A stretch of 64,000 nt of DNA, from positions 773,882 through 837,881 of the forward strand of contig NW_005434663.1 of assembly GCF_000315625.1 (NCBI RefSeq), given 5' to 3'. The notes beneath the pieces are model-generated. The model was not told the DNA's origin and ran no database searches. It saw only the letters and a program-made list of their open reading frames with translations. The position numbers and the translations under genes were made by a program. Origin of the DNA: Guillardia theta CCMP2712 (Eukaryota; Protista; Cryptophyta). Shown piece after piece: positions 9,761 through 41,978 of this stretch; position 1 is the stretch's first letter; every line of letters begins with the position of its first letter.

Positions 9761-12088
9761 TCAAACCTTCCTTCCTTCCTTTGCCTTCTGGCTCTCCGCC
9801 AAGATCATCTGGTTGTACCTGTCGTAGTGCACCTTGCGGTTCAAGCTGATCACCTTCCGCACCCTCCTCGCATTCCTCACAACTCGCTCGTACACGTTCC
9901 TCACAAACGGCGACTGAGGCACATCCGACTCGACCTTGCTCCCGTCCGCTGACACCAGCCGCAGCCATCGCTCCTCCATCGGCCCGTAGCTCTTCTCCAA
10001 AACCATCGCAGGCACCTCAAGAAGCCTCTCCAGCATCTCCCTCGAGTACGCTGACGGCTGGCTGGGCGACAGGCAAGAGGCGATGACCTCCTTCTCTGCC
10101 GCTGACAGCTCGGCCTCGAAGCTCGACGTCGCTGCCTTGACGCGCTCCTCCTTGTCGACAAGCGACGCCTCGAAGCTGTTGAGCGACGTCTTCAAGTGCT
10201 CCAGCAGCTCCGTCACCTTCGGGTCCTTCTTCGTCGCCATCAGTCGCTGCGACGCCACCGCCAGCATGCACGCCGCCAGCACGTCGAAGTGGAAGTCCGC
10301 GTGGTACTTGTGTAGCCTGCTGATGTCCAGCTGCAGGGTCTCCGGGCAAGCGTCGGTCTTGACGGGCTCACTCCCCATGATCAGGCTCAAGACCGCAGCT
10401 GTGTGGATCTGCTCGTACGCCGCGCCCTCGCCCTGCACGAGCTTCGACAGGTCTGCCCGGCCCCTCCCTACCTCCTTCTCTACCTGCGCCCGGATCCACT
10501 CTGGCGTGCGCTGGAGGTAGGCTGGGTTGGCTTTGATCTTCTTGTCCATGTGCGCTCGCTCGTACTCGATCCCGTGGTTCTGAATGACGTGAGCGATGTT
10601 CCGTAGCCGGGCGTTGGCCGCGTCTACTCTCATGACGTTCACCCGCCCCAGCACATACTCCAGCGCCGTGCAGAACAGCGTCGGCTGGTCCTCCGGCGTG
10701 CTAGCTCGGAGCTCCTGCTCGAGAGCCTTCCAGCCTGCCTGCGTCTCCTGCTTCCGCGAGGGCTCCTGCATCTCCATCGCGATCCCCAGCATCCCCTCGA
10801 TCAACGACACACACGACGACCAGTCCAGCGCCCCTGACTCGATCTGCTCTTGCCAGTAGGCCGTGTCGATCTTCTCCTTGAGCTCCTTGCTCCGGCTAGG
10901 CGATAGGTCGATCATCCCGTCCCTCACCTCCCCTACCACCTTGAGCACTCGCACGTAGCACGGCGGGGTGAGCCTCAGGTCGTCTACCAGGCTGTCCCAG
11001 AAAGCCACCTTGAAGCTCTCCCTCACCTTGGACAGCACGGGGTTGTCGAGGTAGCCTGCCCCCTGCTCGTCGAGCTTGAAGGCGGGATCCAGCAGCAGCT
11101 CGTGCGCCAGCTGCTCGTTGGTCATCCGGCCGGGCAGCGAAGACAGCCCGGACGCATTCGTCGAGGACGGTAGCTCTGCTGGCCTCGAGCTGCTTCCGGC
11201 CCCTTGCGAGGAGGACGATGCTGTCTCCTCCGACGGCTCCGCGTCGACCGCAGTGAAGCCTTGCTGTCTTAGCGCCTCGTCGAAGCTCTCCAGCCCCTGG
11301 GCTCCTGCGATCTGTAGCATCTTGGCTCGGAGCTTCGCCTTCTGCGCTCGGAACTCCTCCTTCATAGGCATGTACTCCTGGACGTCAGGGCTGAGGTGTG
11401 ACTCCGCGCGGTAGAGGGCGAGAAGCGCATGCTTGATGCGCTCGGTGAGCTTGTGCTCGTCCGGGACTTTCCAGTCCTTGAAGCGAGCGAGGTAGACGTT
11501 GAGCTGCTTGAGGAAGGGCCTCCACGAGCTCCAATCATGCTGCGTGAGAGGCTGAGCGCGAGAGCTCTCAATGCTCGAGCAGATGTGCCTCAAGGTAGTG
11601 ACGAGGTCGGCGGCGGCATGCTGCACTTGTTGCTCGAGGTGGCCGATGCTCTCGAAGCAGCTGCCGGGTCGGTTGACAACGAGGAAGGCGGCCATGAGGA
11701 CTCGGACGTTGAACTGCTCTACCGTCTCGTCCTTGTCCAGTGGGAGGCCTCGCCGGACGACAGCGCGCTGGATGAGGAAGATGATGCTGGTGACGAGGCG
11801 CTTGAAGTCTCGGATGACCCACTTCTTCTGGGAGCGAGCTGTCATGTCAGAGAAGCGAGCTTCTGCGGGCCACTCGGCGATCAAGGACGATCTGGCGAGT
11901 CTTGCGAGGAGGCTGGGGAGGGAGAATCGGAAGGCGGGGCCTCGGAGGAAGCGAGCGATGCGGGAGGCCAAGATGGTCTTGGGAGGGGAGAGCTGGAGTC
12001 GAGAGAGGACACGCAGGTCAGGGGGAGGGGAGGAGGACGGAGAGAGCAGGAGGTGAGGGGGGGAAGCCGGGGAAGCAGGACGATGCAT
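9761..12088 (-). CDS. TCP11/SOK1-family protein, copy 1 (intronless)
   Basis: Motifs NEQLAHELLLDPAFKL, VRESFKVAFWDSL, VVGEVRDGMIDL and MRVDAANARL fit the T-complex protein 11 domain. The ATG at 12088 is where identity with copy 2 begins. Confidence 0.8.
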   Translation of the reverse strand: MHRPASPASPPHLLLSPSSSPPPDLRVLSRLQLSPPKTILASRIARFLRGPAFRFSLPSLLARLARSSLIAEWPAEARFSDMTARSQKKWVIRDFKRLVTSIIFLIQRAVVRRGLPLDKDETVEQFNVRVLMAAFLVVNRPGSCFESIGHLEQQVQHAAADLVTTLRHICSSIESSRAQPLTQHDWSSWRPFLKQLNVYLARFKDWKVPDEHKLTERIKHALLALYRAESHLSPDVQEYMPMKEEFRAQKAKLRAKMLQIAGAQGLESFDEALRQQGFTAVDAEPSEETASSSSQGAGSSSRPAELPSSTNASGLSSLPGRMTNEQLAHELLLDPAFKLDEQGAGYLDNPVLSKVRESFKVAFWDSLVDDLRLTPPCYVRVLKVVGEVRDGMIDLSPSRSKELKEKIDTAYWQEQIESGALDWSSCVSLIEGMLGIAMEMQEPSRKQETQAGWKALEQELRASTPEDQPTLFCTALEYVLGRVNVMRVDAANARLRNIAHVIQNHGIEYERAHMDKKIKANPAYLQRTPEWIRAQVEKEVGRGRADLSKLVQGEGAAYEQIHTAAVLSLIMGSEPVKTDACPETLQLDISRLHKYHADFHFDVLAACMLAVASQRLMATKKDPKVTELLEHLKTSLNSFEASLVDKEERVKAATSSFEAELSAAEKEVIASCLSPSQPSAYSREMLERLLEVPAMVLEKSYGPMEERWLRLVSADGSKVESDVPQSPFVRNVYERVVRNARRVRKVISLNRKVHYDRYNQMILAESQKAKEGRKV

Positions 12089-13045
12089 GTTGAGAGATCT
12101 AGAGAGTTTCTGATTTGCTCGGTCAAGATTTATGTCGCAGATGGCAAGGGGCTGGGAAAACACGAATCAGAGGAGGGGAGAGTGGAGGTTGAGGAAAGAA
12201 CTCTTGCCAGGCTGGCTGCAAGCTTCGTTGAGGTAGAGGGGAGAACCATCTTGTATTTTAAACTAGTTTGTGGTAAACTGGCTGACCAGGGGTGGTCAGA
12301 TCCCCAGGCTGTCCGTGGGGTGACCGGGTCACTCCAGGCAGCCACGGACTTTGGTCACTGTCACGTGACCGCCATGTTAACCGTCGGATGTTGACCGGCA
12401 TATCCATGGCCTCGTACTGATTTTTAGCTTAACTTTGAGTAAACATCCATGGCCCAGATGATTCGATCCGATTTGTGATGCTGACTCGCGCTAGTTAGTG
12501 GGGCAAGTTTCTCAGTTACCGAGTTGAACATCCGATTGTCCTCGTACTGAATTTCACTAAAGGCTTAACTTTCAAAGTTTGAGCAAACAACCAGTATGGT
12601 CAACCGTGAACGGTTCCTGGTCGGACCGACCGCGCAGTTACTCTATCGGATGATCAGCCTGCCAGGCTGGGCCGTACCCGGTACATAGTACTCCGGTACT
12701 CCATACGGCCCTAGTATGCCAGGGCCCGCAACAAGTTAGTTCAAGTTGGCACTCGGTGACTGCTGCTGAGGCGGCCGGGCCGGCGGCACAGGCTTCTGAG
12801 CTCAGTGAGTGTTCGTGGCACCCGGCGCCCGGTGACCATCCGATCGGATGAATCGCAAGCTGACTCACCCACTCCCGCCGTTAAGTTAGCACTGCGACTA
12901 CGGTAAGTTATTAGTCGGACGGTCTGTCAGTTAGAACTGAGAGAAGTTGAGATTCCCGGTGACTGCGGAAGGGTGCACGAGGAGGTGGGGGTGGGTGGCG
13001 GGTCACCATCTAGTACTTGGCGGTGTAGCATGGTACGGTCTGAGA

Positions 13046-13103
13046 GTAGGGTAGGGTAGGGTAGGGTGGAGGAGGGAAGGGTAGGGTAGGGTAGGGTAGG
13101 GTA
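13046..13103 (+). repeat. (GGGTA)n pentamer tract, potential G-quadruplex
   Basis: Two runs of gtagg repeats separated by a short purine-rich spacer. Confidence 0.85.
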
Positions 13104-13303
13104 AAATCAAAAAAGAACACAAAGTAGCGTGTACGGTGGGAGCTAGGAGACCAGAATGCCACATGCCACGGAAGGAGAAGGGGGATGGGAGGGGAGGGAA
13201 GGGTCAGAGACAGAGACAGAGAGAAAGAGAGAAAGAGAATCTGTTAAGAAGTCGATGGGAAGGCAGCAAGACAGAAGAACTCTAGATATGGCAGGCAGGA
13301 AGG

Positions 13304-13310
13304 TATAAAA
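13304..13310 (+). promoter_or_regulatory. Candidate TATA box of TCP11 copy 2
   Basis: TATAAAA about 140 nt upstream of the ATG at 13449, downstream of a G-rich tract. Confidence 0.4.
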
Positions 13311-13448
13311 ACCTCGAACAACACAAAGCGAGGCCAAGAAGTGATTCTCAGGGCAAAACAGGAACAGTACACACAGCAAACGTGCAAACCGAACATTGAT
13401 CAAACCCTGATTGATTCTCGCAGATCAGTGCTACATCATTGCAGCAAC

Positions 13449-15776
13449 ATGCGTCGTCCTGCTTCCCCGGCTTCTCCCCCTCACCTCCTGCTCTCTCCGT
13501 CCTCCTCCCCTCCCCCTGACCTGCGTGTCCTCTCTCGACTCCAGCTCTCCCCTCCCAAGACCATCTTGGCCTCCCGCATCGCTCGCTTCCTCCGAGGCCC
13601 CGCCTTCCGATTCTCCCTCCCCAGCCTCCTCGCAAGACTCGCCAGATCGTCCTTGATCGCTGAGTGGCCCGCAGAGGCTCGCTTCCCTGACATGACAGCT
13701 CGCTCCCAGAAGAAGTGGGTCATCCGAGACTTCAAGCGCCTCGTCACCAGCATCATCTTCCTCATCCAGCGCGCTGTCGTCCGGCGAGGCCTCCCACTGG
13801 ACAAGGACGAGACGGTAGAGCAGTTCAACGTCCGAGTCCTCATGGCCGCCTTCCTCGTCGTCAACCGACCCGGCAGCTGCTTCGAGAGCATCGGCCACCT
13901 CGAGCAACAAGTGCAGCATGCCGCCGCCGACCTCGTCACTACCTTGAGGCACATCTGCTCGAGCATTGAGAGCTCTCGCGCTCAGCCTCTGACACAGCAT
14001 GATTGGAGCTCGTGGAGGCCCTTCCTCAAGCAGCTCAACGTCTACCTCGCTCGCTTCAAGGACTGGAAAGTCCCGGACGAGCACAAGCTCACCGAGCGCA
14101 TCAAGCATGCGCTTCTCGCCCTCTACCGCGCGGAGTCGCACCTCAGCCCTGACGTCCAGGAGTACATGCCTATGAAGGAGGAGTTCCGAGCACAGAAGGC
14201 GAAGCTCCGAGCCAAGATGCTACAGATCGCAGGAGCCCAGGGGCTGGAGAGCTTCGACGAGGCGCTAAGACAGCAAGGCTTCACTGCGGTCGACGCGGAG
14301 CCGTCGGAGGAGACAGCATCGTCCTCCTCGCAAGGGGCCGGGAGCAGCTCGAGGCCAGCAGAGCTACCGTCCTCGACGAATGCGTCCGGGCTGTCTTCGC
14401 TGCCCGGCCGGATGACCAACGAGCAGCTGGCGCACGAGCTGCTGCTGGATCCCGCCTTCAAGCTCGACGAGCAGGGGGCAGGCTACCTCGACAACCCCGT
14501 GCTGTCCAAGGTGAGGGAGAGCTTCAAGGTGGCTTTCTGGGACAGCCTGGTAGACGACCTGAGGCTCACCCCGCCGTGCTACGTGCGAGTGCTCAAGGTG
14601 GTAGGGGAGGTGAGGGACGGGATGATCGACCTATCGCCCAGCCGGAGCAAGGAGCTCAAGGAGAAGATCGACACGGCCTACTGGCAAGAGCAGATCGAGT
14701 CAGGGGCGCTGGACTGGTCGTCGTGTGTGTCGTTGATCGAGGGGATGCTGGGGATCGCGATGGAGATGCAGGAGCCCTCGCGGAAGCAGGAGACGCAGGC
14801 AGGCTGGAAGGCTCTCGAGGAGGAGCTCCGAGCTGGCACGCCGGAGGACCAGCCGACGCTGTTCTGCAAGGCGCTGGAGTATGTGCTGGGGCGGGTGAAC
14901 GTCATGAGAGTAGACGCGGCCAACGCCCGGCTACGGAACATCGCTCACGTCATTCAGAACCACGGGATCGAGTACGAGCGAGCGCACATGGACAAGAAGA
15001 TCAAAGCCAACCCAGCCTACCTCCAGCGCACGCCAGAGTGGATCCGGGCGGTGGTAGAGAAGGAGGTAGGGAGGGGCCGGGCAGACCTGTCGAAGCTCGT
15101 GCAGGGCGAGGGCGCGGCGTACGAGCAGATCCACACGGCTGCGGTCTTGAGCCTGATCATGGGGAGTGAGCCCGTCAAGACCGACGCTTGCCCGGAGACC
15201 CTGCAGCTGGACATCAGCAGGCTACGCAAGTACCACGCGGACTTCCACTTCGACGTGCTGGCGGCGTGCATGCTGGCGGTGGCGTCGCAGCGACTGATGG
15301 CGACGAAGAAGGACCCGAAGGTGACGGAGCTGCTGGAGCACTTGAAGACGTCGCTCAACAGCTTCGAGGCGTCGCTTGTCGACAAGGAGGAGCGCGTCAA
15401 GGCAGCGACGTCGAGCTTCGAGGCCGAGCTGTCAGCGGCAGAGAAGGAGGTCATCGCCTCTTGCCTGTCGCCCAGCCAGCCGTCAGCGTACTCGAGGGAG
15501 ATGCTGGAGAGGCTTCTTGAGGTGCCTGCGATGGTCTTGGAGAAGAGCTACGGGCCGATGGAGGAGCAGTGGCTGCGGCTGGTGTCAGCGGACGGGAGCA
15601 AGGTCGAGTCGGATGTGCCGCAGTCGCCGTTTGTGAGGAACGTGTACGAGCGAGTTGTGAGGAACGCGAGGAGGGTGCGGAAGGTGATCAGCTTGAACCG
15701 GAAGGTGCACTACGACAGGTACAACCAGATTATTACTTTCAGCACTGGAGCTTTGTCGATCAGAGTTGGGGCTTGA
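13449..15776 (+). CDS. TCP11/SOK1-family protein, copy 2 (intronless)
   Basis: Near-identical inverted copy of 9761-12088 from 4 nt before the ATG to about 15730, with a unique tail IITFSTGALSIRVGA. Confidence 0.8.
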   Translation: MRRPASPASPPHLLLSPSSSPPPDLRVLSRLQLSPPKTILASRIARFLRGPAFRFSLPSLLARLARSSLIAEWPAEARFPDMTARSQKKWVIRDFKRLVTSIIFLIQRAVVRRGLPLDKDETVEQFNVRVLMAAFLVVNRPGSCFESIGHLEQQVQHAAADLVTTLRHICSSIESSRAQPLTQHDWSSWRPFLKQLNVYLARFKDWKVPDEHKLTERIKHALLALYRAESHLSPDVQEYMPMKEEFRAQKAKLRAKMLQIAGAQGLESFDEALRQQGFTAVDAEPSEETASSSSQGAGSSSRPAELPSSTNASGLSSLPGRMTNEQLAHELLLDPAFKLDEQGAGYLDNPVLSKVRESFKVAFWDSLVDDLRLTPPCYVRVLKVVGEVRDGMIDLSPSRSKELKEKIDTAYWQEQIESGALDWSSCVSLIEGMLGIAMEMQEPSRKQETQAGWKALEEELRAGTPEDQPTLFCKALEYVLGRVNVMRVDAANARLRNIAHVIQNHGIEYERAHMDKKIKANPAYLQRTPEWIRAVVEKEVGRGRADLSKLVQGEGAAYEQIHTAAVLSLIMGSEPVKTDACPETLQLDISRLRKYHADFHFDVLAACMLAVASQRLMATKKDPKVTELLEHLKTSLNSFEASLVDKEERVKAATSSFEAELSAAEKEVIASCLSPSQPSAYSREMLERLLEVPAMVLEKSYGPMEEQWLRLVSADGSKVESDVPQSPFVRNVYERVVRNARRVRKVISLNRKVHYDRYNQIITFSTGALSIRVGA

Positions 15777-32069: not shown

Positions 32070-35000
32070 TCACAGTCTTGCCTTTTTCGAAGAACTTTCA
32101 TCTGCCGCACCGGGTGATCGGGTTGATTTTTCATCATCTGTGACTTTCTCCTTCGACTCTTCAGAAACCGTAAACCCTACTGCTCCCGCAGAATCATCAC
32201 TTACGGCCAGCACTGTGTCGCAAGCACCAACCTGCATATCGTCGCCAGGACCTTTCGACGAAGAACTAGCACCAACGAAATTGCTGGTAGATGTCGTTTG
32301 CGATTTCTCTGTTTGCTGCTGCATTCCCAACTTGAACTCCTGGCTCTCCGCCAAGATCATCTGGTTGTACCTGTCGTAGTGCACCTTGCGGTTCAAGCTG
32401 ATCACCTTCCGCACCCTCCTCGCGTTCCTCACAACACGCTCGTACACGTTCCTCACAAACGGCGACTGCGGCACATCTGACTCGACCTTGCTCCCGTCCG
32501 CTGACACCAGCCGCAGCCACTGCTCCTCCATCGGCCCGTAGCTCTTCTCCAAGACCATCGCAGGCACCTCAAGAAGCCTCTCCAGCATCTCCCTCGAGTA
32601 CGCTGACGGCTGGCTGGGCGACAGGCAAGAGGCGATGAGCTCCTTCTCTGCCGCTGACAGCTCGGCCTCGAAGCTCGACGTCGCTGCCTTGACGCGCTCC
32701 TCCTTTTCGACAAGCGACGCCTCGAAGCTGTTGAGCGACGTCTTCAAATGCTCCAGCAGCTCCGTCACCTTCGGGTCCTTCTTCGTCGCCATCAGTCGCT
32801 GCGACGCCACCGCCAGCATGCACGCCGCCAGCACGTCGAAGTGGAAGTCCGCGTGGTACTTGTGTAGCCTGCTGATGTCCAGCTGCAGGGTCTCCGGGCA
32901 AGCGTCGGTCTTGACGGGCTCACTCCCCATGATCAGGCTCAAGACCGCAGCCGTGTGGATCTGCTCGTACGCCGCGCCCTCGCCCTGGACGAGCTTCGAC
33001 AGGTCTGCCCGGCCCCTCCCTACCTCCTTCTCTACCACCGCCCGGATCCACTCTGGCGTGCGCTGTAGGTAAGCTGGGTTGGCTTTGATCTTCTTGTCCA
33101 TGTGCGCTCGCTCGTACTCGATCCCGTGGTTCTGAATGACGTGAGCGATGTTCCGTAGCCGGGCGTTGGCCGCGTCTACTCTCATGACGTTCACCCGCCC
33201 CAGCACATACTCCAGCGCCTTGCAGAACAGCGTCGGCTGGTCCTCCGGCGTGCTAGCTCGGAGCTCCTCCTCGAGAGCCTTCCAGCCTGCCTGCGTCTCC
33301 TGCTTCCGCGAGGGCTCCTGCATCTCCATCGCGATCCCCAGCATCCCCTCGATCAACGACACACACGACGACCAGTCCAGCGCCCCTGACTCGATCTGCT
33401 CTTGCCAGTAGGCCGTGTCGATCTTCTCCTTGAGCTCCTTGCTCCGGCTAGGCGATAGGTCGATCATCCCGTCCCTCACCTCCCCTACCACCTTGAGCAC
33501 TCGCACGTAGCACGGCGGGGTGAGCCTCAGGTCGTCTACCAGGCTGTCCCAGAAAGCCACCTTGAAGCTCTCCCTCACCTTGGACAGCACGGGGTTGTCG
33601 AGGTAGCCTGCCCCCTGCTCGTCGAGCTTGAAGGCGGGATCCAGCAGCAGCTCATGCGCCAGCTGCTCGTTGGTCATCCGGCCGGGCAGCGAAGACAGCC
33701 CGGACGCATTCGTCGAGGACGGTAGCTCTGCTGGCCTCGAGCTGCTTCCGGCCCCTTGCGAGGAGGACGATGCTGTCTCCTCCGACGGCTCCGCGTCGAC
33801 CGCAGTGAAGCCTTGCTGTCTTAGCGCCTCGTCGAAGCTCTCCAGCCCCTGGGCTCCTGCGATCTGTAGCATCTTGGCTCGGAGCTTCGCCTTCTGCGCT
33901 CGGAACTCCTCCTTCATAGACATGTACTCCTGGGCTTCAGGGCTGAGGTGTGACTCCGCACGGTAGAGGGCGAGAAGCGCATGCTTGATGCGCTCGGTGA
34001 GCTTGTGCTCGTCCGGGACTTTCCAGTCCTTGAAGCGAGCGAGGTAGACGTTGAGCTGCTTGAGGAAAGATATCCAGGAGCACCAATCATGCAATGTTAC
34101 AGGATTAGATTTAGAGCCTTCAATTCTAGCACAGATCTGTTTGAAGGTTTTGACGAGATCAGCAGCAGCATCTTGAACTTGTTTCTCGAGGTGGCCGATG
34201 TTCTCAAAACAGCTTGAAGGTCTTGCATCGATCATAAATGCTGCAAGGAAAACCCTGACATTGGGCCTTTCTTGATCAAGGTTCGAATTACCGTCGGAAG
34301 GCAACTTGGTTTTAATTTTGGCTCTGGTCGCTAAGTACAGAAACGTTTCTAGAGTTTTCTTCATGCATGCAATCACCCATTTAACTCGTAAACGAGAAGC
34401 CACTTCTTCGAAAGGCACATTGAGCATCCATTCAGAAATGATTTTAGTTCGCTGTACCCTGGATACTTGACATCTGAGAGAATTCTGATACGCATGAGTT
34501 CTAAAGAAACGAATAAGTAGGAAACTTGCTGATTGTGCATCAAGATTCAAATTTTGAACTTGTTTTTTCCTTTTGTACAAGTTTGTACAACATCGCCAGT
34601 AGTACTCTGGGTCGTGAGCTGTTAAATCCTCATCGGTTTGGTTCGCGATTTCTTCATCATTGTCCAAGACTATTGCTTCTGTATCTTCATGAAATTCGGA
34701 TAGACCCAATTCATTCTTATGTAGCGCTTTGAAATACTCTAGAATGCGATCGCCTTTTGCAAGGAAGTTTGAGCAATGCTGAATTCTGTTATTGAAGTAA
34801 CGTGCGAAAGCAAGATTCCCAGACAAGGGTTTGCCAAAAGTGATGCAAGTCAAGTTCTGCTGAGATAAGCAGGACTGAACTGCATGAAGCATTATCAATT
34901 GTGAAATCAAGCCTCCTAAAGAATATCCGGTGAAATATATTTCATTATCTCCTTGTCTTTCCTTCAAAAAATGGACAAGTTCCTTATGTACATTGCTACT

Positions 35001-35303
35001 GACAAATTTCTGTACATCGTCTACAATGGAAGAGTGAATACATACATTCGGGGGAACATCACTCCAAATCGAATCTACTTCATGCAGGGGAGAGAGAGAG
35101 CATTTCTCGATCCGGATTAACTCAGCATCATGTCGAAGGTGAAATGCTACAATGTAACTTTGCCCAGAACGGAATGCTGCAATCTTTATGTTTTCAGTTT
35201 CCCAGGTTTCAACCGTCTCAGCAGGAATTTCACTGAACTTCGTTGAATCCCAAACATGCAGTGCAGAAGATCCACATATGGCGATGATCTTGAAAGTATA
35301 CAT
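32070..35303 (-). CDS. TCP11/SOK1-family protein, copy 3, with N-terminal class-3 lipase-like domain (intronless)
   Basis: 1077-aa ORF with IYFTGYSLGG (GxSxG), CITFGKPLSGNLAFARYF, KGDRI and AHDPEYY, followed by the shared TCP11 core. Ends SSKKARL. Confidence 0.82.
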   Translation of the reverse strand: MYTFKIIAICGSSALHVWDSTKFSEIPAETVETWETENIKIAAFRSGQSYIVAFHLRHDAELIRIEKCSLSPLHEVDSIWSDVPPNVCIHSSIVDDVQKFVSSNVHKELVHFLKERQGDNEIYFTGYSLGGLISQLIMLHAVQSCLSQQNLTCITFGKPLSGNLAFARYFNNRIQHCSNFLAKGDRILEYFKALHKNELGLSEFHEDTEAIVLDNDEEIANQTDEDLTAHDPEYYWRCCTNLYKRKKQVQNLNLDAQSASFLLIRFFRTHAYQNSLRCQVSRVQRTKIISEWMLNVPFEEVASRLRVKWVIACMKKTLETFLYLATRAKIKTKLPSDGNSNLDQERPNVRVFLAAFMIDARPSSCFENIGHLEKQVQDAAADLVKTFKQICARIEGSKSNPVTLHDWCSWISFLKQLNVYLARFKDWKVPDEHKLTERIKHALLALYRAESHLSPEAQEYMSMKEEFRAQKAKLRAKMLQIAGAQGLESFDEALRQQGFTAVDAEPSEETASSSSQGAGSSSRPAELPSSTNASGLSSLPGRMTNEQLAHELLLDPAFKLDEQGAGYLDNPVLSKVRESFKVAFWDSLVDDLRLTPPCYVRVLKVVGEVRDGMIDLSPSRSKELKEKIDTAYWQEQIESGALDWSSCVSLIEGMLGIAMEMQEPSRKQETQAGWKALEEELRASTPEDQPTLFCKALEYVLGRVNVMRVDAANARLRNIAHVIQNHGIEYERAHMDKKIKANPAYLQRTPEWIRAVVEKEVGRGRADLSKLVQGEGAAYEQIHTAAVLSLIMGSEPVKTDACPETLQLDISRLHKYHADFHFDVLAACMLAVASQRLMATKKDPKVTELLEHLKTSLNSFEASLVEKEERVKAATSSFEAELSAAEKELIASCLSPSQPSAYSREMLERLLEVPAMVLEKSYGPMEEQWLRLVSADGSKVESDVPQSPFVRNVYERVVRNARRVRKVISLNRKVHYDRYNQMILAESQEFKLGMQQQTEKSQTTSTSNFVGASSSSKGPGDDMQVGACDTVLAVSDDSAGAVGFTVSEESKEKVTDDEKSTRSPGAADESSSKKARL

Positions 35304-35842: not shown

Positions 35843-37602
35843 TGCTTTGTTAAAAAGAAAGCACTGTGCTACTTTTGTCGTTCATGCACCTTTCATTGCA
35901 ATTTCAAGAGTGCAACGATTTTTTGCCGGAATGATTGATATTGTCCGTTTAGTGAAGCTCTGCTATAGTTGACGGTCTCCACTGGGCCACGTTACACTTT
36001 CGAATTCAAATCCCTCCACACCTTTTCACATTATTACATAGGTTCAAGTGTGTTCCGAATGTTTACACCCCTTAGTTCACTGCTAAAATACAAAATACAA
36101 GACGTTTCTTGCAGTTCTTCGTGTGCAATACTGCCGGGTCAACAGAGCGTAACTTGGGTATCTTCTTCGTTCCATTTCTACAGAACCACAAGTTCCATGC
36201 CTGCATCATGCTCCCAAGTTCATCCGGCAGGAAAGCATTAGTGGGAAAAGAACCTCGAAACTCTCCCTCTCGTAGCACCTCTCGAAGGTACTCTCCGATG
36301 AACTCCTTGTGCATGGATGTATTCTCGTTGACTACTTGCATGTTATTCTGACCTGCTGCAATCATTGAATCCTGTCTGGGTTCTCTCTGAAATGAATCAT
36401 TTCAGCCTACATTTCAGCCAGTGATCCCTCATTCGCGCGACCACGACCCTCGCGTCGTTGGATACTGCATCAGGCTGTTGACTGCTACCGAGCGCAATTA
36501 TGACACGACGGACAGGGAACTCCTTGCTATCAAGGATACGCTTCTTTCTTTTCGTTTGTATGCACAGAATTCCCGAAGAGGCTGCATCGGCTTCTCAAAG
36601 GGGAGGAACCGGCTCATTCACTCGCAAAAAGCAATACATCACGTTGATAACGACATGTAGATCCTAGACTACTCTTCACTGTATTTAATGATCTCTCCAT
36701 CCGTTAGCATGCACTTGCATTTCCCTTCCCCATCGACCAGCAGGACATCCAGGTTTTCCACGAGCTTGCATTCTTGTAGTTTTGAGATCACGATCGCAAG
36801 CGCTTCTGCAAGCGGCGGATCCCCTCCAACCACATACCCTCTGTAAATCTTACCTGATACGTGCGGTCTGGGTAAAGGTTTTGAGATCTCGTGCATGAGG
36901 TTTTCCAGTTCTTTCCCAACTAGTTCTTCCTTCCCTGCGAAGCCAACGTCTCGCAGCTTCTTACAGACTTTTCTGCCATACTCACTCAATGTCTTCGTGT
37001 CCGCCGTCAACAAATGCTCATCCACAAACATCTCCAAAGCTTTCGTGAGAGACATGCCGCTGCTGGACAGGGCGAACTCAATCAGAGCTCGGTTGTTGGG
37101 TATGACCTTGAACCGCGATAATTCTCGGAGAGTTTCAATCTTCTGTTGCTGCAATTGCTTGTAGAGTCTCTCCTTGTCGGCCTTGATCTCTTTCAGCTGC
37201 ATCTCCTTGTCGGCCTTGATCTCTTTCAGCTGCATCTCCTTGTCGGCCTTGATCTCTTTCAGCTGCATCTCCTTGTCGGCCTTGATCACTTTCAGCTGCA
37301 TCTCCTTGTCGGCAATGATTTTCTCCTTGTCGGCAATGAGTCTCTCCTTGTCGGCCTTGACTTCTTCTTCAAACTGTTTCTTCATCTCATCCAGGCATAG
37401 CTCAATGCGACGAAGTCTGCTTGACTGCCACGGCCACCCTGACCAGCTTGCCGATCCTGTTGGGGACATGCTGAGGGGTCTTGGCAGCGTGATCTGCCGT
37501 AGCCTCTCCCGACCAACACTGTAGAGCAGCTGCTTATCTCCTCCTAGTCTTCCTTGTCTTCTCTGCATGCTCAGGCTGAAAACTCTCCTCAACATTTTCA
37601 GA
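35843..37602 (-). repeat. Duplicated patchwork block, copy A (counterpart of 46904-48897, mostly inverted)
   Basis: 35952-37602 matches the reverse complement of about 46904-48784. 35843-35954 matches 48787-48897 in direct orientation. Confidence 0.85.
36421..36560 (+). mobile_element. Fragment of Ty3/gypsy-type RT-associated RNase H
   Basis: RVVGYCIRLLTATERNYDTTDRELLAIKDTLLSFRLY matches the family motif ..AY.SR.L..AE.NYST.E.ELLA....L..FR.Y. No other pol sequence or LTRs seen. Confidence 0.8.
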
Positions 37603-37610
37603 AATACCAT
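36669..37610 (-). CDS. Intronless coiled-coil tandem-repeat protein, family member A (313 aa)
   Basis: Open frame with 33-bp repeats encoding IKADKEMQLKE. N- and C-terminal regions are highly similar to 46912-48144. Confidence 0.75.
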   Translation of the reverse strand: MVFLKMLRRVFSLSMQRRQGRLGGDKQLLYSVGRERLRQITLPRPLSMSPTGSASWSGWPWQSSRLRRIELCLDEMKKQFEEEVKADKERLIADKEKIIADKEMQLKVIKADKEMQLKEIKADKEMQLKEIKADKEMQLKEIKADKERLYKQLQQQKIETLRELSRFKVIPNNRALIEFALSSSGMSLTKALEMFVDEHLLTADTKTLSEYGRKVCKKLRDVGFAGKEELVGKELENLMHEISKPLPRPHVSGKIYRGYVVGGDPPLAEALAIVISKLQECKLVENLDVLLVDGEGKCKCMLTDGEIIKYSEE

Positions 37611-37630
37611 GTGTCGTGATGGGTGAAATA

Positions 37631-37951
37631 GATTTCTTGCGACATGAATGGCAGCAAGAGGGATTGGATGCAGGAGAGATTTGGCAGGAGGAATACATGG
37701 CTTCGAACCAGGTCAGTAGAGAAGTTTCAAATACCCGATGTTATTCACCGAGTTTGAATCACCTGACACAGATCCCGAGACAAACTGATTCCGTGTCATG
37801 TGGCATATTTCTGTGCGGAATAGCTGACTGCCTGTCTGGAAACATGGCGGTGAATTCATTTGGCCAAGGGGACATAGACGAGATCCGGCAAGCGATGGAA
37901 AGGTTGTTGACAAAGGTGTATTTACCAGCGGAAGAAGTAAACGTGGAGTGA
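37631..37951 (+). pseudogene. 3' fragment of a Ulp1/SENP (peptidase C48) gene
   Basis: Removing intron 37712-37771 gives FLRHEWQQ...W...QIPRQTDSVSCGIFLCGIADCL...FGQGDIDEIRQAM, the PxQxxxxxCG catalytic-Cys motif. The upstream His/Asp region is absent. Confidence 0.72.
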
Positions 37952-38312
37952 TGGATGCCTTAAAACGAGGAGTTTGCAAAGTCCAGACTAGCATTGCAAG
38001 GTAGGGTAAAGGTACTTCGAAGATAAACACACGTGGACGAGTGTTGGGGACAGAAGGATAGTAGTTGCCATCACAGCGTTCACCATCGTGAAACCAACAA
38101 CCTGCCGACAACGTGCAATGGGCATAACAGGTAGTAGAGGATCTCAATGGGAGTAGCCCTGACAAGTAAGAGATGGTCTGATGAACTGATATAGATAACT
38201 GCAGAGCTTGCCGCAGTGCCCCAGAATGTACGACACTGAACAGTGTTAGCAGCATTGGTGTGCGAATGACATACTCCGCGACGATGTGGGATGAGTGAAC
38301 GAGGGAGGAGTG

Positions 38313-38502
38313 GTGATGTAGCACCCCTCCTAGGTATAGTATGTCAGGGTGCCAGAAGGGGGTACTGTAGACTTTCCAACAAAGTGATGAAGTACCCCTC
38401 ATGGGTATAGGATGTCAGGCTGCCACAAGGGGGTACTGTAGACTTTCCAAGAAAGTGATGAGGTACCCCTCCTATGTATAGCTGCCAGGAGGGGGTACTG
38501 TA
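38313..38502. repeat. 71-bp imperfect tandem repeat (about 2.7 units) with internal inverted repeat
   Basis: Units start with gtgatg at 38313, 38384 and 38455. Each has (gt/gc)acccct...agggggtac. Confidence 0.85.
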
Positions 38503-38930
38503 GTCTGTTGGGGGTATGACGACCACCCCTGTGACAACCGATGTTCTCCGACAAAGGAGGGTGGGGGGTGGTGGATTGAGGAGAGGTGAGGGTAATCGGG
38601 GGGTAGTGAGAGGGAAGTGGTGGGGTAGTCGAATACAAGAATACTTTTTGTACCGTAATGATAAAAAGGTTGTTGACAATTATTAATTAGTACCAGATAG
38701 TACCCACCCCCTAGATGTACTTGCCTTGTTTGGACCGGTGAAGGCAGAGGAGAATATGCTTTAAAATAGATAAGATTTTAATCTGTAACCCATGATTTTG
38801 GGCTCTTTTCTGTCGAATACCCCATCAGATTGGATTAGAGCAACTAGGGGTTTTATAGAGCCTATAAAACTTTTTATAGACAGGTGCCGTAAGCACCGGT
38901 ACCTGATTCTAGTGGTAGTGTGGGAAAAAC

Positions 38931-38932
<2 letters not shown>

Positions 38933-38969
<37 letters not shown>
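38933..38969. repeat. (AT)n microsatellite
   Basis: Perfect dinucleotide run. Confidence 0.95.
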
Positions 38970-38970
<1 letters not shown>

Positions 38971-39249
38971 TTTTTAAAACTGCCCGTTTTCTACCGTTAT
39001 GCGGATATGTAACGGTCTTAGCAAGTTCCTGGCTAAACCTGACTACCCCCCAATGGGTACTCTCCCTGAGTTCGTGGAAAAAATTGGAATTGGGTCGGGG
39101 TGAGTGCATGGCTATCTGACCCGGTACTTCATTTATTCCAGGTCTGGATAATGTGGGGGTTATCCACGATGGGCCACAGGGTGAGGGGGTGAGGTGGTGA
39201 GGGGGTGAGGGGGTGGGGGGTGCTGAGGAGGGGTAGGGGTGACCGGAGC

Positions 39250-39256
39250 TATAAAA
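39250..39256 (+). promoter_or_regulatory. Candidate TATA box of TCP11 copy 4
   Basis: TATAAAA directly after a G-run-rich tract (39171-39241) and before a pyrimidine-rich leader. Confidence 0.45.
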
Positions 39257-39494
39257 GCTGATCGGTTTCACAACCTTGCTCGTTCTTCCCTCACATCCAT
39301 CTTCACTCCCTCCTTGCACCTCTCCTGCCACTCAAAACCACCTCCACACCTCCTCAGCTGCCTCCTCAGCTCTACTCCCACAGCCTCGCATACTTCTGCA
39401 TAGAACCTCCTCGTTCTTTCATTGTATTCTCCCCACGATTCCCCCTCCCTTGTTCCCCAGAATCCTTTCCCAAGTGCAAAACCTTTCCCAAAAC

Positions 39495-41978
39495 ATGCCC
39501 TCTATCACTCATTCAAATTCATACAACATCCACAGAAGTGATATCAAAGATCAGGATGTTTCTTGTAGAAAAAGAAAAGAATCCTCGATAGTTTTCTCCG
39601 ATACAGATCTCCAACAGTACGTTCCTGACATTCAAAGTATAAAGCGACAACGATACCCGAATGGTTGCACTAACGAGTCAAACAAGATTGAGATCTGTGA
39701 ACTTCCTTGCACGCAAATTCATCGGGCTGGTGAGCCACTCCTCATGCAAAGAAGAGCGTCTGCAAAAATCATTTTACGCTTTTTTCAATACAATGCCTGT
39801 AAGAAATCGCTGAAACGGCTAGTTGCAGCGTTGCAGCGAACTCAACTTGTTCAAACGTGGCCTTCAGATGTAATTTTTCAAGCTATGGTGAATCGCTCTC
39901 AGAAGAAGTGGGTTGTCAGAGACTTCAGACATCTAATAACAAGCATTATCTTCCTCATCCAGCGCGCTATTGTCAAGCGAGGCCTCCCACTGGACAAGGA
40001 CGAGACGGTAGAGCAGTTCAACGTCCGAGTCCTCATGGCCGCCTTTCTCGTCGTCAACCGACCCGGCAGCTGCTTCGAGAGCATCGGCCACCTCGAGAAA
40101 CAAGTGCAGCATGCCGCCGCCGACCTCGTCACAAGCATTAGACAAATATGCGCTGGAATTGAAAACTCTCGCGCTCAGCCTCTCACACAGCATGATTGGA
40201 GCTCGTGGAGGCCCTTCCTCAAGCAGCTCAACGTCTACCTCGCTCGCTTCAAGGACTGGAAAGTCCCGGACGAGCACAAGCTCACCGAGCGCATCAAGCA
40301 TGCGCTTCTCGCCCTCTACCGTGCGGAGTCACACCTCAGCCCTGACGCCCAGGAGTACATGTCTGTGAAGGAGGAGTTCCGAGCGCAGAAGGCGAAGCTC
40401 CGAGCCAAGATGCTACAGATCGCAGGAGCCCAGGGGCTGGAGAGCTTCGACGAGGCGCTAAGGCAGCAAGGCTTCACTGCGGTCGACGCGGAGCCGTCGG
40501 AGGAGACAGCTTCGTCCTCCTCGCAAGGGGCCGGGAGCAGCTCGAGGCCAGCAGAGCTACCGTCCTCGACGAATGCGTCCGGGCTGTCTTCGCTGCCCGG
40601 CCGGATGACCAACGAGCAGCTGGCGCATGAGCTGCTGCTGGATCCCGCCTTCAAGCTCGACGAGCAGGGGGCAGGCTACCTCGACAACCCCGTGCTGTCC
40701 AAGGTGAGGGAGAGCTTCAAGGTGGCTTTCTGGGACAGCCTGGTAGACGACCTGAGGCTCACCCCGCCGTGCTACGTGCGAGTGCTCAAGGTGGTAGGGG
40801 AGGTGAGGGACGGGATGATCGACCTATCGCCTAGCCGGAGCAAGGAGCTCAAGGAGAAGATCGACACGGCCTACTGGCAAGAGCAGATCGAGTCAGGGGC
40901 GCTGGACTGGTCGTCGTGTGTGTCGTTGATCGAGGGGATGCTGGGGATTGCAATGGAGATGCAGGAGCCCTCGCGGAAGCAGGAGACGCAGGCAGGCTGG
41001 AAGGCTCTCGAGGAGGAGCTCCGAGCTGGCACGCCAGAGGACCAGCCGACGCTGTTCTGCAAGGCGCTGGAGTATGTGCTGGGGCGGGTGAACGTCATGA
41101 GAGTAGACGCGGCCAACGCCCGGCTACGGAACATCGCTCACGTCATTCAGAACCACGGGATCGAGTACGAGCGAGCGCACATGGACAAGAAGATTAAAGC
41201 CAACCCAGCCTACCTCCAGCGCACGCCAGAGTGGATCCGGGCGGTGGTAGAGAAGGAGGTAGGGAGGGGCCGGGCAGTCCTGTCGAAGCTCGTGCAGGGC
41301 GAGGGCGCGGCGTACGAGCAGATCCACACGGCTGCGGTCTTGAGCCTGATCATGGGGAGTGAGCCCGTCAAGACCGACGCTTGCCCAGAGACCCTGCAGC
41401 TGGACATCAGCAGGCTACGCAAGTACCACGCGGACTTCCACTTCGACGTGCTGGCGGCGTGCATGCTAGCGGTGGCGTCGCAGCGACTGATGGCGACGAA
41501 GAAGGACCCGAAGGTGACGGAGCTGCTGGAGCACTTGAAGACGTCGCTCAACAGCTTCGAGGCGTCGCTTGTCGACAAGGAGGAGCGTGTCAAGGCAGCG
41601 ACGTCGAGCTTCGAGGCCGAGCTGTCAGCGGCAGAGAAGGAGGTCATCGCCTCTTGCCTGTCGCCCAGCCAGCCGTCAGCGTACTCGAGGGAGATGCTGG
41701 AGAGGCTTCTTGCGGTGCCTGCGATGGTCTTGGAGAAGAGCTACGGGCCGATGGAGGAGCAGTGGCTGCGGCTGGTGTCAGCGGACGGGAGCAAGGTCGA
41801 GTCGGGTGTGCCGCAGTCGCCGTTTGTGAGGAACGTGTACGAGCGTGTTGTGAGGAATGCGAGGAGGGTGCGGAAGGTGATCAGCTTGAACCGCAAGGTG
41901 CACTACGACAGGTACAACCAGATGATCTTGGCGGAGAGCCAGGAGTTGATGGAGAGGAGGCAGGAGGATTTATTGTAG
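39495..41978 (+). CDS. TCP11/SOK1-family protein, copy 4, with unique basic N-terminal extension (intronless)
   Basis: First in-frame ATG at 39495. N-terminus contains RKRKE...IKRQR and an IQ-like segment (SAKIILRFFQ), followed by the shared core. Confidence 0.8.
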   Translation: MPSITHSNSYNIHRSDIKDQDVSCRKRKESSIVFSDTDLQQYVPDIQSIKRQRYPNGCTNESNKIEICELPCTQIHRAGEPLLMQRRASAKIILRFFQYNACKKSLKRLVAALQRTQLVQTWPSDVIFQAMVNRSQKKWVVRDFRHLITSIIFLIQRAIVKRGLPLDKDETVEQFNVRVLMAAFLVVNRPGSCFESIGHLEKQVQHAAADLVTSIRQICAGIENSRAQPLTQHDWSSWRPFLKQLNVYLARFKDWKVPDEHKLTERIKHALLALYRAESHLSPDAQEYMSVKEEFRAQKAKLRAKMLQIAGAQGLESFDEALRQQGFTAVDAEPSEETASSSSQGAGSSSRPAELPSSTNASGLSSLPGRMTNEQLAHELLLDPAFKLDEQGAGYLDNPVLSKVRESFKVAFWDSLVDDLRLTPPCYVRVLKVVGEVRDGMIDLSPSRSKELKEKIDTAYWQEQIESGALDWSSCVSLIEGMLGIAMEMQEPSRKQETQAGWKALEEELRAGTPEDQPTLFCKALEYVLGRVNVMRVDAANARLRNIAHVIQNHGIEYERAHMDKKIKANPAYLQRTPEWIRAVVEKEVGRGRAVLSKLVQGEGAAYEQIHTAAVLSLIMGSEPVKTDACPETLQLDISRLRKYHADFHFDVLAACMLAVASQRLMATKKDPKVTELLEHLKTSLNSFEASLVDKEERVKAATSSFEAELSAAEKEVIASCLSPSQPSAYSREMLERLLAVPAMVLEKSYGPMEEQWLRLVSADGSKVESGVPQSPFVRNVYERVVRNARRVRKVISLNRKVHYDRYNQMILAESQELMERRQEDLL

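What the first reader, a model, noticed from the sequence alone, without database searches (positions are those of the whole stretch)
9761..41978. Modular four-gene TCP11 array: constant core with different N-terminal modules and C-terminal tails
Seen: four intronless TCP11-family ORFs in an intron-rich genome share a near-identical core. Identity is confined almost exactly to coding sequence: it starts 4 nt before the ATG for copies 1 and 2 and ends just after YDRYNQ(MILAESQ). Flanks are unrelated. N-termini come in three forms (Pro/Ser-rich in copies 1 and 2, lipase in copy 3, basic NLS-like in copy 4) and all four tails differ. Known: TCP11/SOK1 genes are usually low-copy and poorly understood. 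Inference: a constant scaffold diversified by variable head and tail modules, comparable to integrated-domain immune receptors or variant gene families. This is my best candidate for an undescribed system.
Basis: partly seen in the sequence, partly recalled or inferred. Interest (0 to 1): 0.82.

Follow-up and report, generated by a model that had tools for sequence, protein, structure and literature searches.

The report
TCP11 paralogues homogenised by gene conversion
Four (in fact at least six) real, transcribed TCP11-family genes of the alga Guillardia theta share a near-identical core. The cause is gene conversion among old paralogues, not a new modular "head-and-tail" system, so this is an ordinary case of concerted evolution.

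Summary
Window = Guillardia theta CCMP2712. Four intronless ORFs (c1 9761-12088-, c2 13449-15776+, c3 32070-35303-, c4 39495-41978+) all match Pfam Tcp11 (E~1e-44). c3 also carries an N-terminal class-3 lipase. They share a gap-free core that is 97.3-99% identical, and their flanks are unrelated at DNA level.

The "modular system" reading does not hold. Upstream of the identity boundary the heads are still homologous TCP11-family sequence, but they belong to two old subfamilies. c3's head and tail group with lipase-TCP11 genes found elsewhere. The heads of c1, c2 and c4 group with a non-lipase subfamily.

- In the core, all copies form one clade (100/99).
- In the head, that clade is rejected (AU p=1e-4).
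- 128 of 231 informative-site pairs fail the four-gamete test.
- c4 keeps an unconverted patch.
- GC3 steps 0.40 / 0.86 / 0.43 exactly at c3's tract borders.
- Core dN/dS is about 0.2.

This is mosaic concerted evolution by non-allelic gene conversion. A second inverted pair lies elsewhere on the same scaffold, so the family is larger than four. A first-stage note on this same stretch (s1-433878) had also proposed gene conversion.

Interest is modest.

The parts
9761..12088 (-). c1: TCP11-family gene, 775 aa from the ATG at 12088. It has a Pro/Ser-rich N-terminus, a non-lipase (B-type) head and a lipase-type (A-type) core.
   Evidence: Pfam Tcp11 8.5e-44. MMETSP transcript P0126 is identical over all 775 aa. 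Head is B-like and core is A-like.
13449..15776 (+). c2: inverted twin of c1, 775 aa, with a private 15-aa tail after YDRYNQ.
   Evidence: Inverted repeat 9804-12092 / 13445-15733, 99%. Equals annotated protein P0001. Tail divergence starts at nt 2283 of the CDS.
12093..13444 (.). Unique 1352-nt spacer between the head-to-head pair c1/c2, presumably holding both promoters. It contains a (TAGGG)n-like repeat at 13043-13102.
   Evidence: The two halves give no similarity to each other.
34557..35303 (-). c3 class-3 lipase domain (residues 1-249), AT-rich.
   Evidence: Lipase_3 3.2e-13. AF2 model superposes on fungal class-3 lipases at Z 15.4, rmsd 3.7-4.1 over 211-219 residues. GxSxG motif GYSLG is visible in the translation. 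Head GC3 is 0.40.
34068..34556 (-). c3 unconverted N-terminal TCP11-family region (residues about 250-412). It is homologous to the other copies' heads but of the lipase subfamily.
   Evidence: Alignment. Head tree places c3 with GUITHDRAFT_122507, P0004 and P0005. Diagnostic columns A 35 / B 5.
32340..34067 (-). c3 converted tract (core), 98.5-99% identical to c1, c2 and c4, GC3 0.86.
32070..32339 (-). c3 own C-terminal tail (about 90 aa, predicted disordered, GC3 0.43). It ends in SSKKARL, as do other lipase-type genes.
   Evidence: pLDDT <50 for residues 1008-1077.
39495..39892 (+). c4 private head (first ATG at 39495). It is AT-rich (GC3 0.38). Its last part is B-type TCP11-family sequence.
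   Evidence: Its words are held at 0.92-0.97 in probable transcriptome assemblies.
39893..41942 (+). c4 tract shared with c1, c2 and c5 (from 39893) and with c3 (sharp near-identity from about 40215, i.e. nt 574 of the c1 CDS; the blastn alignment starts at 40068).
40133..40165 (+). Unconverted patch inside the c4 tract: about 10 differences in 33 nt, flanked by identity on both sides.
41943..41978 (+). c4 short private tail (ELMERRQEDLL).

Best explanation
The array is a lineage-specific cluster of at least six intronless TCP11-family paralogues in Guillardia theta. Their central and 3' coding sequence (about 1.7-2.3 kb) is kept near-identical by non-allelic (ectopic) gene conversion, that is, by mosaic concerted evolution.

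The genes descend from two old subfamilies. Type A has an N-terminal class-3 lipase and a C-terminal basic tail. Type B has a Pro/Ser-rich N-terminus. c3 is a type-A gene whose middle has been overwritten. c1, c2, c4 and the off-window pair c5/c6 carry type-B heads joined to the same type-A-like core, so they are chimeric.

The 'variable heads and tails' are simply the parts outside the conversion tracts. Identity stops near the CDS ends because the flanks share no homology that could support heteroduplex formation.

Shown here: the tract borders, the conflict between head and core trees, the mosaic sites, the GC3 step, purifying selection, and transcription of c1 and of the c3 head-core junction.

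Inferred: the mechanism (conversion rather than repeated cassette insertion). The direction of the last event into c3 and c4 is also inferred: a GC-rich c1-like donor written into AT-rich recipients, or alternatively GC-biased conversion raising GC3.

Protein function is inferred only from the families. It is probably a TCP11/Sok1-type all-alpha scaffold linked in animals and yeast to cAMP/PKA signalling, and in c3 it is coupled to a probably active lipase.
For: - Homology extends upstream of the identity boundary in all copies.
- Head tree: c3 groups with lipase-type genes (92/87). c1, c2, c4, c5 and the metagenome copy group with B-type genes (95/99*).
- Core tree: all six copies form one clade (100/99*) nested in the lipase type (88/83). 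AU rejects placing them with the B type (p=0.004).
- Head data reject the six-copy clade: AU p=1.4e-4, and 3.5e-5 for the strict head.
- Diagnostic columns for c1: head B26/A12 against core B19/A51, Fisher p=4e-5. c3 is A-type throughout.
- In the 1680-nt core, 22 informative sites give 128 of 231 pairs that fail the four-gamete test, at only 1-2.7% divergence.
- c4 keeps an unconverted patch.
- GC3 is 0.40/0.86/0.43 across c3 head/core/tail (p=4e-53 and 3e-17). It is 0.38 against 0.83 in c4 (p=9e-25).
- Raised GC3 together with mosaic homogenisation is the recognised signature of gene conversion (PMC2720389).
- dN/dS is 0.11-0.36, mean 0.21.
- A second inverted pair with the same core lies elsewhere on the scaffold.
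- The lipase-TCP11 architecture and the tail motif are conserved in GUITHDRAFT_122507, P0004 and P0005.
Against: - A PHI-like test for spatial clustering of incompatibilities is not significant (p=0.28). Tract structure inside the core is therefore not resolved.
- The reciprocal AU test on the head cannot reject putting all copies with the lipase type (p=0.19).
- The core is A-type by protein but GC-rich like the B-type gene GUITHDRAFT_122397 (GC3 0.87). All pure A-type genes are AT-rich. The donor and the order of events are therefore open.
- Copy-private changes (S>W 28, W>S 13) do not discriminate GC-biased conversion from donor composition.
- In both inverted pairs, identity begins only 4 and 13 nt before the ATG. 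Conversion alone does not predict this.
- There is no orthologous array from a sister species to show that within-genome similarity exceeds between-species similarity.
- No read-level confirmation of copy number was possible.
Confidence: 0.8

Rival explanations
1. Cassette duplication, or exon-shuffling-like fusion. One core segment was copied several times and pasted next to unrelated N- and C-terminal coding sequences. This would make truly modular genes without any pre-existing TCP11 recipient.
For: Identity is confined to the CDS and flanks are unrelated at DNA level. The extreme N-termini (c1/c2 about 40 aa, c4 about 130 aa, c3 lipase, c5/c6 about 32 aa) share no detectable similarity. 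In both inverted pairs the arms start 4 and 13 nt before the ATG.
Against: c3 and c4 retain homologous but divergent TCP11-family sequence upstream of the border. c3 also retains a subfamily-typical tail downstream. So the recipients were already full TCP11 genes. c4 has an internal unconverted patch. The pervasive incompatible splits need repeated exchange. No repeats or mobile-element features were seen at the borders.
Confidence: 0.1
2. A functional modular or variant system. Selection keeps a constant scaffold and diversifies head and tail modules, comparable to integrated-domain receptors or variant surface gene families.
For: Several different N-termini sit on one conserved core, and the copies are transcribed and under purifying selection. 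The lipase domain is structurally of the class that EDS1-family immune proteins also carry.
Against: The only Pfam domains are Tcp11 and Lipase_3. The lipase fusion is ancestral, not a recent integration. The other heads are short low-complexity sequence, also typical of B-type homologues in other species. Similarity to EDS1 ends with the lipase domain; beyond residue 249 the rmsd is about 16 A. The heads show no sign of being alternative versions of one another, and the pattern has a sufficient neutral explanation.
Confidence: 0.05
3. Assembly artefact. One or two real genes were multiplied by mis-assembly of reads.
For: This is a draft assembly, and the window holds a 698-N gap. The transcript assembly P0125 is itself chimeric between c3 and c1. 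That shows how easily these copies collapse in short-read data.
Against: Each copy has private substitutions and unique flanks on both sides. The c1 transcript matches c1 and not c2 at every diagnostic residue. The unique c4 head-core junction is present in independent data sets from six studies. The copies are in different orientations, with other genes between them.
Confidence: 0.03

Closest known systems
Mosaic concerted evolution of paralogues by non-allelic gene conversion (for example mammalian BMP8A/B, DDX19A/B and TUBG1/2; PMC2720389)
   Same: A sharply bounded, near-identical tract sits inside paralogues whose remaining coding parts are divergent. Trees conflict between regions. GC3 is raised in the homogenised part. 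The tract is under purifying selection.
   Different: Here at least six copies take part, including two head-to-head inverted pairs and dispersed copies. The exchanging genes come from two anciently separated subfamilies, so the products are chimeras. The host is a cryptophyte alga. Persistence over time is not shown, because no sister-species comparison exists.
TCP11 / Sok1 family (Pfam PF05794; mouse TCP11, yeast Sok1; PMC7124965)
   Same: A full-length PF05794 match in all copies. The domain is all-alpha with no catalytic motif. The family is tied to cAMP/PKA signalling and sperm motility in mouse and to suppression of a PKA defect in yeast.
   Different: The cryptophyte proteins carry about 300 extra conserved helical residues N-terminal to the Pfam domain. 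They are intronless and multi-copy. One subfamily is fused to a class-3 lipase. No functional data exist for them.
Fungal class-3 triacylglycerol lipases (Rhizomucor miehei lipase 3tgl, Malassezia MDL 5gw8)
   Same: c3 residues 1-249 have the same alpha/beta-hydrolase fold (Z 15.4). They match Lipase_3 and carry a GxSxG elbow.
   Different: Sequence identity is only 11-18%. The domain is fused to a 750-aa helical TCP11 region. Catalytic competence was not tested.
EDS1 / PAD4 / SAG101 plant immune proteins (lipase-like domain plus helical EP domain)
   Same: An N-terminal class-3 lipase-like domain (Z 13-14 over residues 1-249) is followed by an all-helical C-terminal region.
   Different: The helical parts do not superpose (rmsd about 16 A when the alignment is extended to residue 501). 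There is no sequence relationship and no immune context. The resemblance is one of architecture only.

Membership tests
TCP11 / Sok1 (PF05794) | Full-length match to the Tcp11 profile above Pfam's gathering score | tested here: met
   150-155 bits against a cut-off of 27. Profile positions 1-434/436 are matched in all four copies.
TCP11 / Sok1 (PF05794) | Role in the cAMP/PKA pathway, as reported for mouse TCP11 and yeast Sok1 | not testable with these tools
   Known only from the literature (PMC7124965). There is no solved structure or structural relative to lean on.
Class-3 lipase (PF01764) | Profile match above the gathering score, and an alpha/beta-hydrolase fold like known class-3 lipases | tested here: met
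   50.2 bits against 22. Z 15.4, rmsd 3.7-4.1, 211-219 residues aligned to 3tgl, 5gw8 and 6a0w.
Class-3 lipase (PF01764) | Complete Ser-Asp-His triad in catalytic geometry | tested here: inconclusive
   GYSLG (GxSxG) is present, and candidate Asp (AKGD) and His (AHDPEYY) are conserved in c3, GUITHDRAFT_122507 and P0005 in the alignment. The His position is not conserved in P0004. The geometry was not measured.
Paralogues under non-allelic gene conversion (concerted evolution) | A tract far more similar between paralogues than the adjoining homologous coding sequence | tested here: met
   c1 against c3: 97-100% from nt 601 on, but 10-45% raw nucleotide identity in 60-nt windows over nt 1-420 in the fixed ungapped register, which is not a homologous alignment upstream of about nt 361. 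In the homologous head region the protein identity is 26-37%. The 150 nt before the border (nt 421-573) are about 78% identical.
Paralogues under non-allelic gene conversion (concerted evolution) | Significantly different phylogenies for the tract and for flanking homologous sequence | tested here: met
   Core: six-copy clade at 100/99*. Head: that clade is rejected, AU p=1.4e-4 and 3.5e-5. Core: grouping with the B type is rejected, p=0.004.
Paralogues under non-allelic gene conversion (concerted evolution) | Mosaic or incompatible site patterns among copies | tested here: met
   128 of 231 informative-site pairs fail the four-gamete test at 1-2.7% divergence. c4 has an unconverted patch.
Paralogues under non-allelic gene conversion (concerted evolution) | Spatial clustering of compatible sites (PHI or GENECONV-type significance) | tested here: not met
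   PHI-like permutation test p=0.28. Incompatibility is too pervasive and the informative sites are too few.
Paralogues under non-allelic gene conversion (concerted evolution) | Raised GC3 in the homogenised tract | tested here: met
   c3 0.40/0.86/0.43 and c4 0.38/0.83, Fisher p<=3e-17. A GC-rich donor is an alternative cause.
Paralogues under non-allelic gene conversion (concerted evolution) | Paralogues within the genome more alike than orthologues between species | not testable with these tools
   No orthologous array from a sister species was available.
Integrated-domain immune receptors / variant gene families | A receptor or surface-protein core (NB-ARC, LRR, TIR or similar), with unrelated integrated domains differing between paralogues | tested here: not met
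   Only Tcp11 and Lipase_3 were found. The lipase fusion is ancestral to a subfamily.
EDS1 / PAD4 / SAG101 | Lipase-like domain plus an EP helical domain | tested here: not met
   The lipase-like part matches (Z 13-14). The helical part does not (rmsd about 16 A).

The most novel reading that the evidence does not exclude
The lipase-TCP11 (type A) genes may be cargo of large DNA viruses or virus-like elements of cryptophytes. On this reading c3 is an endogenised, AT-rich copy whose middle was overwritten by the host's GC-rich paralogues. That would make it a virus-host chimeric gene made by gene conversion, with the GC3 step as its footprint.

Supporting hints:
- Every pure type-A gene found is AT-rich (GC3 0.20-0.50).
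- The G. theta one lies on a 16-kb, 40% GC scaffold. Its neighbours include an EsV-1-7 motif protein, an HNH endonuclease and a TnpB/Fanzor-like ORF.
- The neighbour of the metagenomic type-A gene has a 52%-identical relative on an IMG/VR viral contig.

Against:
- Two IMG/VR scans found no TCP11.
- The window and those contigs share no synteny beyond the gene.
- AT-rich genes also occur nearby in the window.
Probability: 0.15. Interest if true: 0.55.

Novelty: new member of a known kind. Interest (0 to 1): 0.3.

Why it matters
A striking 'constant core, variable ends' pattern in raw sequence can be produced entirely by gene conversion between old paralogues. The tests used here separate that from true modularity: homology beyond the border, region-specific trees, four-gamete counts and GC3 steps.

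Three smaller points may be useful.
- The public G. theta annotation truncates these genes. It misses the lipase-TCP11 fusion in both c3 and GUITHDRAFT_122507.
- A conserved fusion of a poorly understood scaffold (TCP11/Sok1) to a lipase offers a functional lead towards lipid signalling.
- The array is a compact natural case for studying conversion tracts and GC-biased repair in a cryptophyte.

Tried and rejected
- Giant-virus TCP11 homologues: two IMG/VR scans, one with the c3 protein and one with a 20-sequence alignment, found none.
- Synteny between the window and the contigs of the divergent paralogues: tblastx hits only the TCP11 genes.
- EDS1-like architecture: the Foldseek rows looked suggestive, but VIA-align shows that only the lipase domain matches.
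- 'IQ-like' calmodulin motif in the conserved basic helix (RFLRG / RFFR): no Pfam support even at E<=10, so dropped.
- Structural relatives of the TCP11 domain: the model has pLDDT 95.4. Foldseek finds no match below E 0.2, and VIA-align gives only generic helical bundles with Z<10. There is no sequence relative in the PDB.
- PHI-like recombination test: not significant.
- Reciprocal AU test on the head: not significant.
- Polarised private substitutions as a test of GC-biased conversion: undecided.
- Exact look-ups of full-length c3 and c4 proteins: not in the protein collection.
Full report
WHAT IS THERE

The window is from Guillardia theta CCMP2712, scaffold JH992975.1, 1,098,122 bp.
- c1, 9761-12163 (-), first ATG at 12088
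- c2, 13341-15776 (+), ATG at 13449
- c3, 32070-35303 (-)
- c4, 39276-41978 (+), first ATG at 39495

All four match Pfam Tcp11 end to end (E about 1e-44). c3 also has an N-terminal Lipase_3 match (3e-13).

blastn between copies gives single, indel-free alignments. c1/c2 are 98.9% identical over 2286 nt, and the other pairs 96.6-97.2% over 1856-2050 nt. c1/c2 identity begins 4 nt before the two ATGs. For all copies it ends within a few codons after YDRYNQ. Outside these tracts no DNA similarity is detectable, even with word size 7.

REFINEMENTS

A 60-nt sliding comparison shows that the sharp near-identity of c3 begins only at about nt 574 of the c1 CDS (window about 34067). The preceding 150 nt are about 78% identical. 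In the 1680-nt core proper, all copies differ by only 1.0-2.7%.

The family is larger than four.
- The same scaffold carries another head-to-head pair about 875-896 kb along (locus L001). It consists of GUITHDRAFT_102887 (c5, intact) and GUITHDRAFT_102886 (c6).
- c6 has three tandem partial duplications and a foreign insert.
- The arms of this pair are 99% alike and are separated by 360 nt.
- A seventh copy is on an ENA metagenome contig.
- G. theta also has two divergent paralogues on small scaffolds. GUITHDRAFT_122507 is 64% identical. GUITHDRAFT_122397 is 50% identical.

EXPRESSION AND GENE STRUCTURE

An MMETSP transcript product (P0126) equals the c1 ORF over all 775 residues. c1 is therefore transcribed, intronless, and starts at the upstream ATG rather than at the annotated internal Met.

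Another transcript (P0125, 996 aa) equals c3 from residue 1 through the lipase head, across the junction and up to residue 678, including four c3-specific residues. It then switches to the c1 state at every later diagnostic site. The switch falls in a 650-nt stretch without differences, so it is most simply a short-read assembly chimera. It still shows that the lipase-core junction is transcribed as one unspliced piece.

For c4 there is only indirect evidence. Contig sets that look like transcriptomes hold 0.41-0.50 of the mixed genic and intergenic stretch 34150-40100. They hold 0.92-0.97 of the c4 head and junction 39495-40100, in several studies.

I have no read-level data.

WHY THE CORE IS CONSTANT

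A protein alignment with relatives shows that homology does not stop at the identity border. All copies and all relatives align from a conserved basic helix (RFLRG / RFFR), about 100-190 residues upstream of the border, through to YDRYNQ.

Upstream of the border the copies fall into two old types.
- c3 resembles GUITHDRAFT_122507 and two metagenomic proteins (P0004, P0005). All of these carry the class-3 lipase.
- c3, GUITHDRAFT_122507 and P0005 also end in a similar basic tail (SSKKARL, SSKKPRV, SPKKAKVN). I call this type A.
- c1, c2, c4, c5 and the metagenome copy resemble GUITHDRAFT_122397 and P0007-P0010. These have Pro/Ser/Thr-rich N-termini and no lipase. I call this type B.

Tree and site evidence:
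- The head tree puts c3 with type A (92/87) and the others with type B (95/99*).
- The core tree puts all six copies in one tight clade (100/99*), nested in type A (88/83).
- AU tests reject the B grouping on core data (p=0.004).
- AU tests reject the six-copy clade on head data (p=1.4e-4, and 3.5e-5 for the strict head).
- The reverse constraint on the short head is not rejected (p=0.19).
- At columns fully diagnostic for A against B, c1 is B26/A12 in the head and B19/A51 in the core (Fisher p=4e-5). c3 is type A in both.

So c3 has a different history in its middle than at its ends, and the c1-like genes are B-head / A-core chimeras.

Evidence within the core:
- Among six sequences there are 22 parsimony-informative sites, and 128 of 231 site pairs fail the four-gamete test. 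At 1-2.7% divergence, recurrent mutation would give about one such site. Repeated exchange among copies is therefore needed.
- A PHI-like test for distance dependence is not significant (p=0.28). Tract lengths inside the core remain unresolved.
- c4 keeps a 33-nt patch (40133-40165) with about 10 differences, flanked by identity on both sides.
- Pairwise dS averages 0.047 and dN/dS 0.21, range 0.11-0.36. The copies are constrained, hence probably functional.

COMPOSITION

GC3 follows the tract borders exactly.
- c3: head 0.40 (421 codons), core 0.86 (566 codons), tail 0.43 (90 codons). Fisher p=4e-53 and 3e-17.
- c4: private head 0.38, the rest 0.83 (p=9e-25).
- c1, c2 and c5 are about 0.84 throughout.
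- The B-type GUITHDRAFT_122397 is 0.87.
- The pure A-type genes are 0.50, 0.44 and 0.20.

Raised GC3 in homogenised parts of otherwise divergent paralogues is the recognised companion of gene conversion (PMC2720389). Two readings fit the data:
- GC-biased repair acting only where copies exchange, or
- a GC-rich c1-like donor written into AT-rich recipients (c3, c4).

Copy-private changes (S>W 28, W>S 13; all five directional changes in c3 are S>W) do not decide between them. The puzzle that the core is type A by protein yet GC-rich stays open (note).

WHAT THE PROTEINS ARE

An AlphaFold model of c3 (pLDDT 83.6) has three parts:
- an alpha/beta lipase domain, residues 1-249
- a long all-helical body, residues 255-1006, interrupted by a disordered Ser-rich linker
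- a disordered tail

The lipase domain superposes on fungal class-3 lipases at Z 15.4. Rows for EDS1, PAD4 and SAG101 owe their score to the lipase-like domain alone. Extending those alignments gives an rmsd of about 16 A.

The Pfam TCP11 domain folded alone (pLDDT 95.4) has no meaningful match in the PDB by Foldseek, VIA-align or sequence.

Function therefore rests on the literature. TCP11 has no known catalytic activity. Mouse knockouts show reduced sperm motility and reduced phosphorylation of PKA substrates. Yeast Sok1 suppresses a PKA defect (PMC7124965).

My working guess is a helical scaffold in cyclic-nucleotide/PKA-type signalling, coupled in type A to a lipid hydrolase. This is inference only.

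The pattern is real. The 'modules', however, are what is left outside the conversion tracts.
- The lipase fusion is ancestral.
- The other heads are short low-complexity sequences, as in homologues from other species.
- The tails are short and partly related.
- No receptor-type domain exists.
- No giant-virus TCP11 was found in IMG/VR.

A first-stage note on this same stretch (s1-433878) had also suggested gene conversion from incompatible SNP splits. I re-derived that independently.

LOOSE ENDS

1. In both inverted pairs the arms begin 4 and 13 nt before the ATG, and the spacers are unrelated.
2. The pure type-A genes sit in AT-rich, virus-like surroundings.
   - The GUITHDRAFT_122507 scaffold (GC 0.40) encodes an EsV-1-7 motif protein, an HNH endonuclease and a TnpB/Fanzor-like protein.
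   - The neighbour of P0004 is a DUF5765 protein with a 52%-identical relative on an IMG/VR contig.
   - This keeps alive a minority reading: c3 is an endogenised viral-cargo gene partly overwritten by host paralogues.
3. Public gene models truncate c1, c3, c4 and GUITHDRAFT_122507 at internal Met codons. The lipase-TCP11 fusion is therefore unannotated.

VERDICT

This is a genuine, expressed, multi-copy TCP11 cluster shaped by mosaic concerted evolution. It is a new member of a known kind, of modest interest. It has a side lead on a conserved lipase-TCP11 fusion and a possible viral connection.

Noticed in passing
L001:6259-12091 (same scaffold, record positions about 874-896 kb): A second head-to-head TCP11 pair: GUITHDRAFT_102886 (c6) and GUITHDRAFT_102887 (c5). 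The arms 8408-9414 / 9775-10781 are 99% alike with a 360-nt spacer. c6 carries three tandem partial duplications (period 342-375 nt) and an unrelated insert. It is annotated with introns and is probably decaying.
   Followed up: partly
L002:1-12914 (G. theta scaffold JH993309.1, 16.3 kb, GC 0.40): A full 992-aa intronless lipase-TCP11 ORF lies at 1936-4914; the public model GUITHDRAFT_122507 starts inside the lipase. Its neighbours look viral or mobile: an EsV-1-7 Cys-motif protein, an HNH_3 endonuclease, and a 687-aa ORF with a Cas12f1-like TNB domain (TnpB/Fanzor-like).
   Followed up: partly
L004:5574-6287 and L007:2855-3562: The neighbour of the metagenomic lipase-TCP11 gene P0004 is a DUF5765 protein. 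It has a 52%-identical relative on a 56.9-kb IMG/VR viral contig, which hints that type-A TCP11 genes may travel with large DNA viruses.
   Followed up: partly
window 12092/13445 and L001 9775: In both inverted pairs the repeat arms begin only 4 and 13 nt upstream of the start codon, while the spacers (1352 and 360 nt) are unrelated. This is unexplained.
   Followed up: no
window 13043-13102: A (TAGGG)n-like pentanucleotide repeat lies in the c1-c2 spacer, with a further degenerate copy at 13180-13204.
   Followed up: no
window 9761-12163, 32070-35303, 39276-41978: Public gene models start c1, c3 and c4 at internal Met codons (694, 721 and 697 aa). Transcripts support the longer ORFs for c1 and c3, so the lipase domain of c3 is missing from the annotation.
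   Followed up: yes
MMETSP transcript product P0125: This transcript equals c3 up to residue 678 and c1 from residue 679 on, with a single switch inside a 650-nt identical stretch. It is probably a de Bruijn-graph chimera, and a warning for expression studies of this family.
   Followed up: yes
window 19568-26482 and 26287-31179: Two very long uninterrupted ORFs (2304 aa with IPT/TIG domains; 1630 aa with no Pfam hit) lie between the TCP11 copies. This is unusual for an intron-rich genome.
   Followed up: no
window 42340-42455 and L001 19957-20073: A 117-nt element that is 95.7% identical lies near both TCP11 loci. Its nature is unknown.
   Followed up: no
window 9764-11137 (TCP11 Pfam domain of c1): The domain is a very confident all-alpha AlphaFold model (pLDDT 95.4, pTM 0.89). 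It has no recognisable relative among solved structures, so the TCP11 fold appears to be experimentally uncharacterised.
   Followed up: partly
Nothing was laid, and the stretch was left out of all later searches.
   Followed up: no
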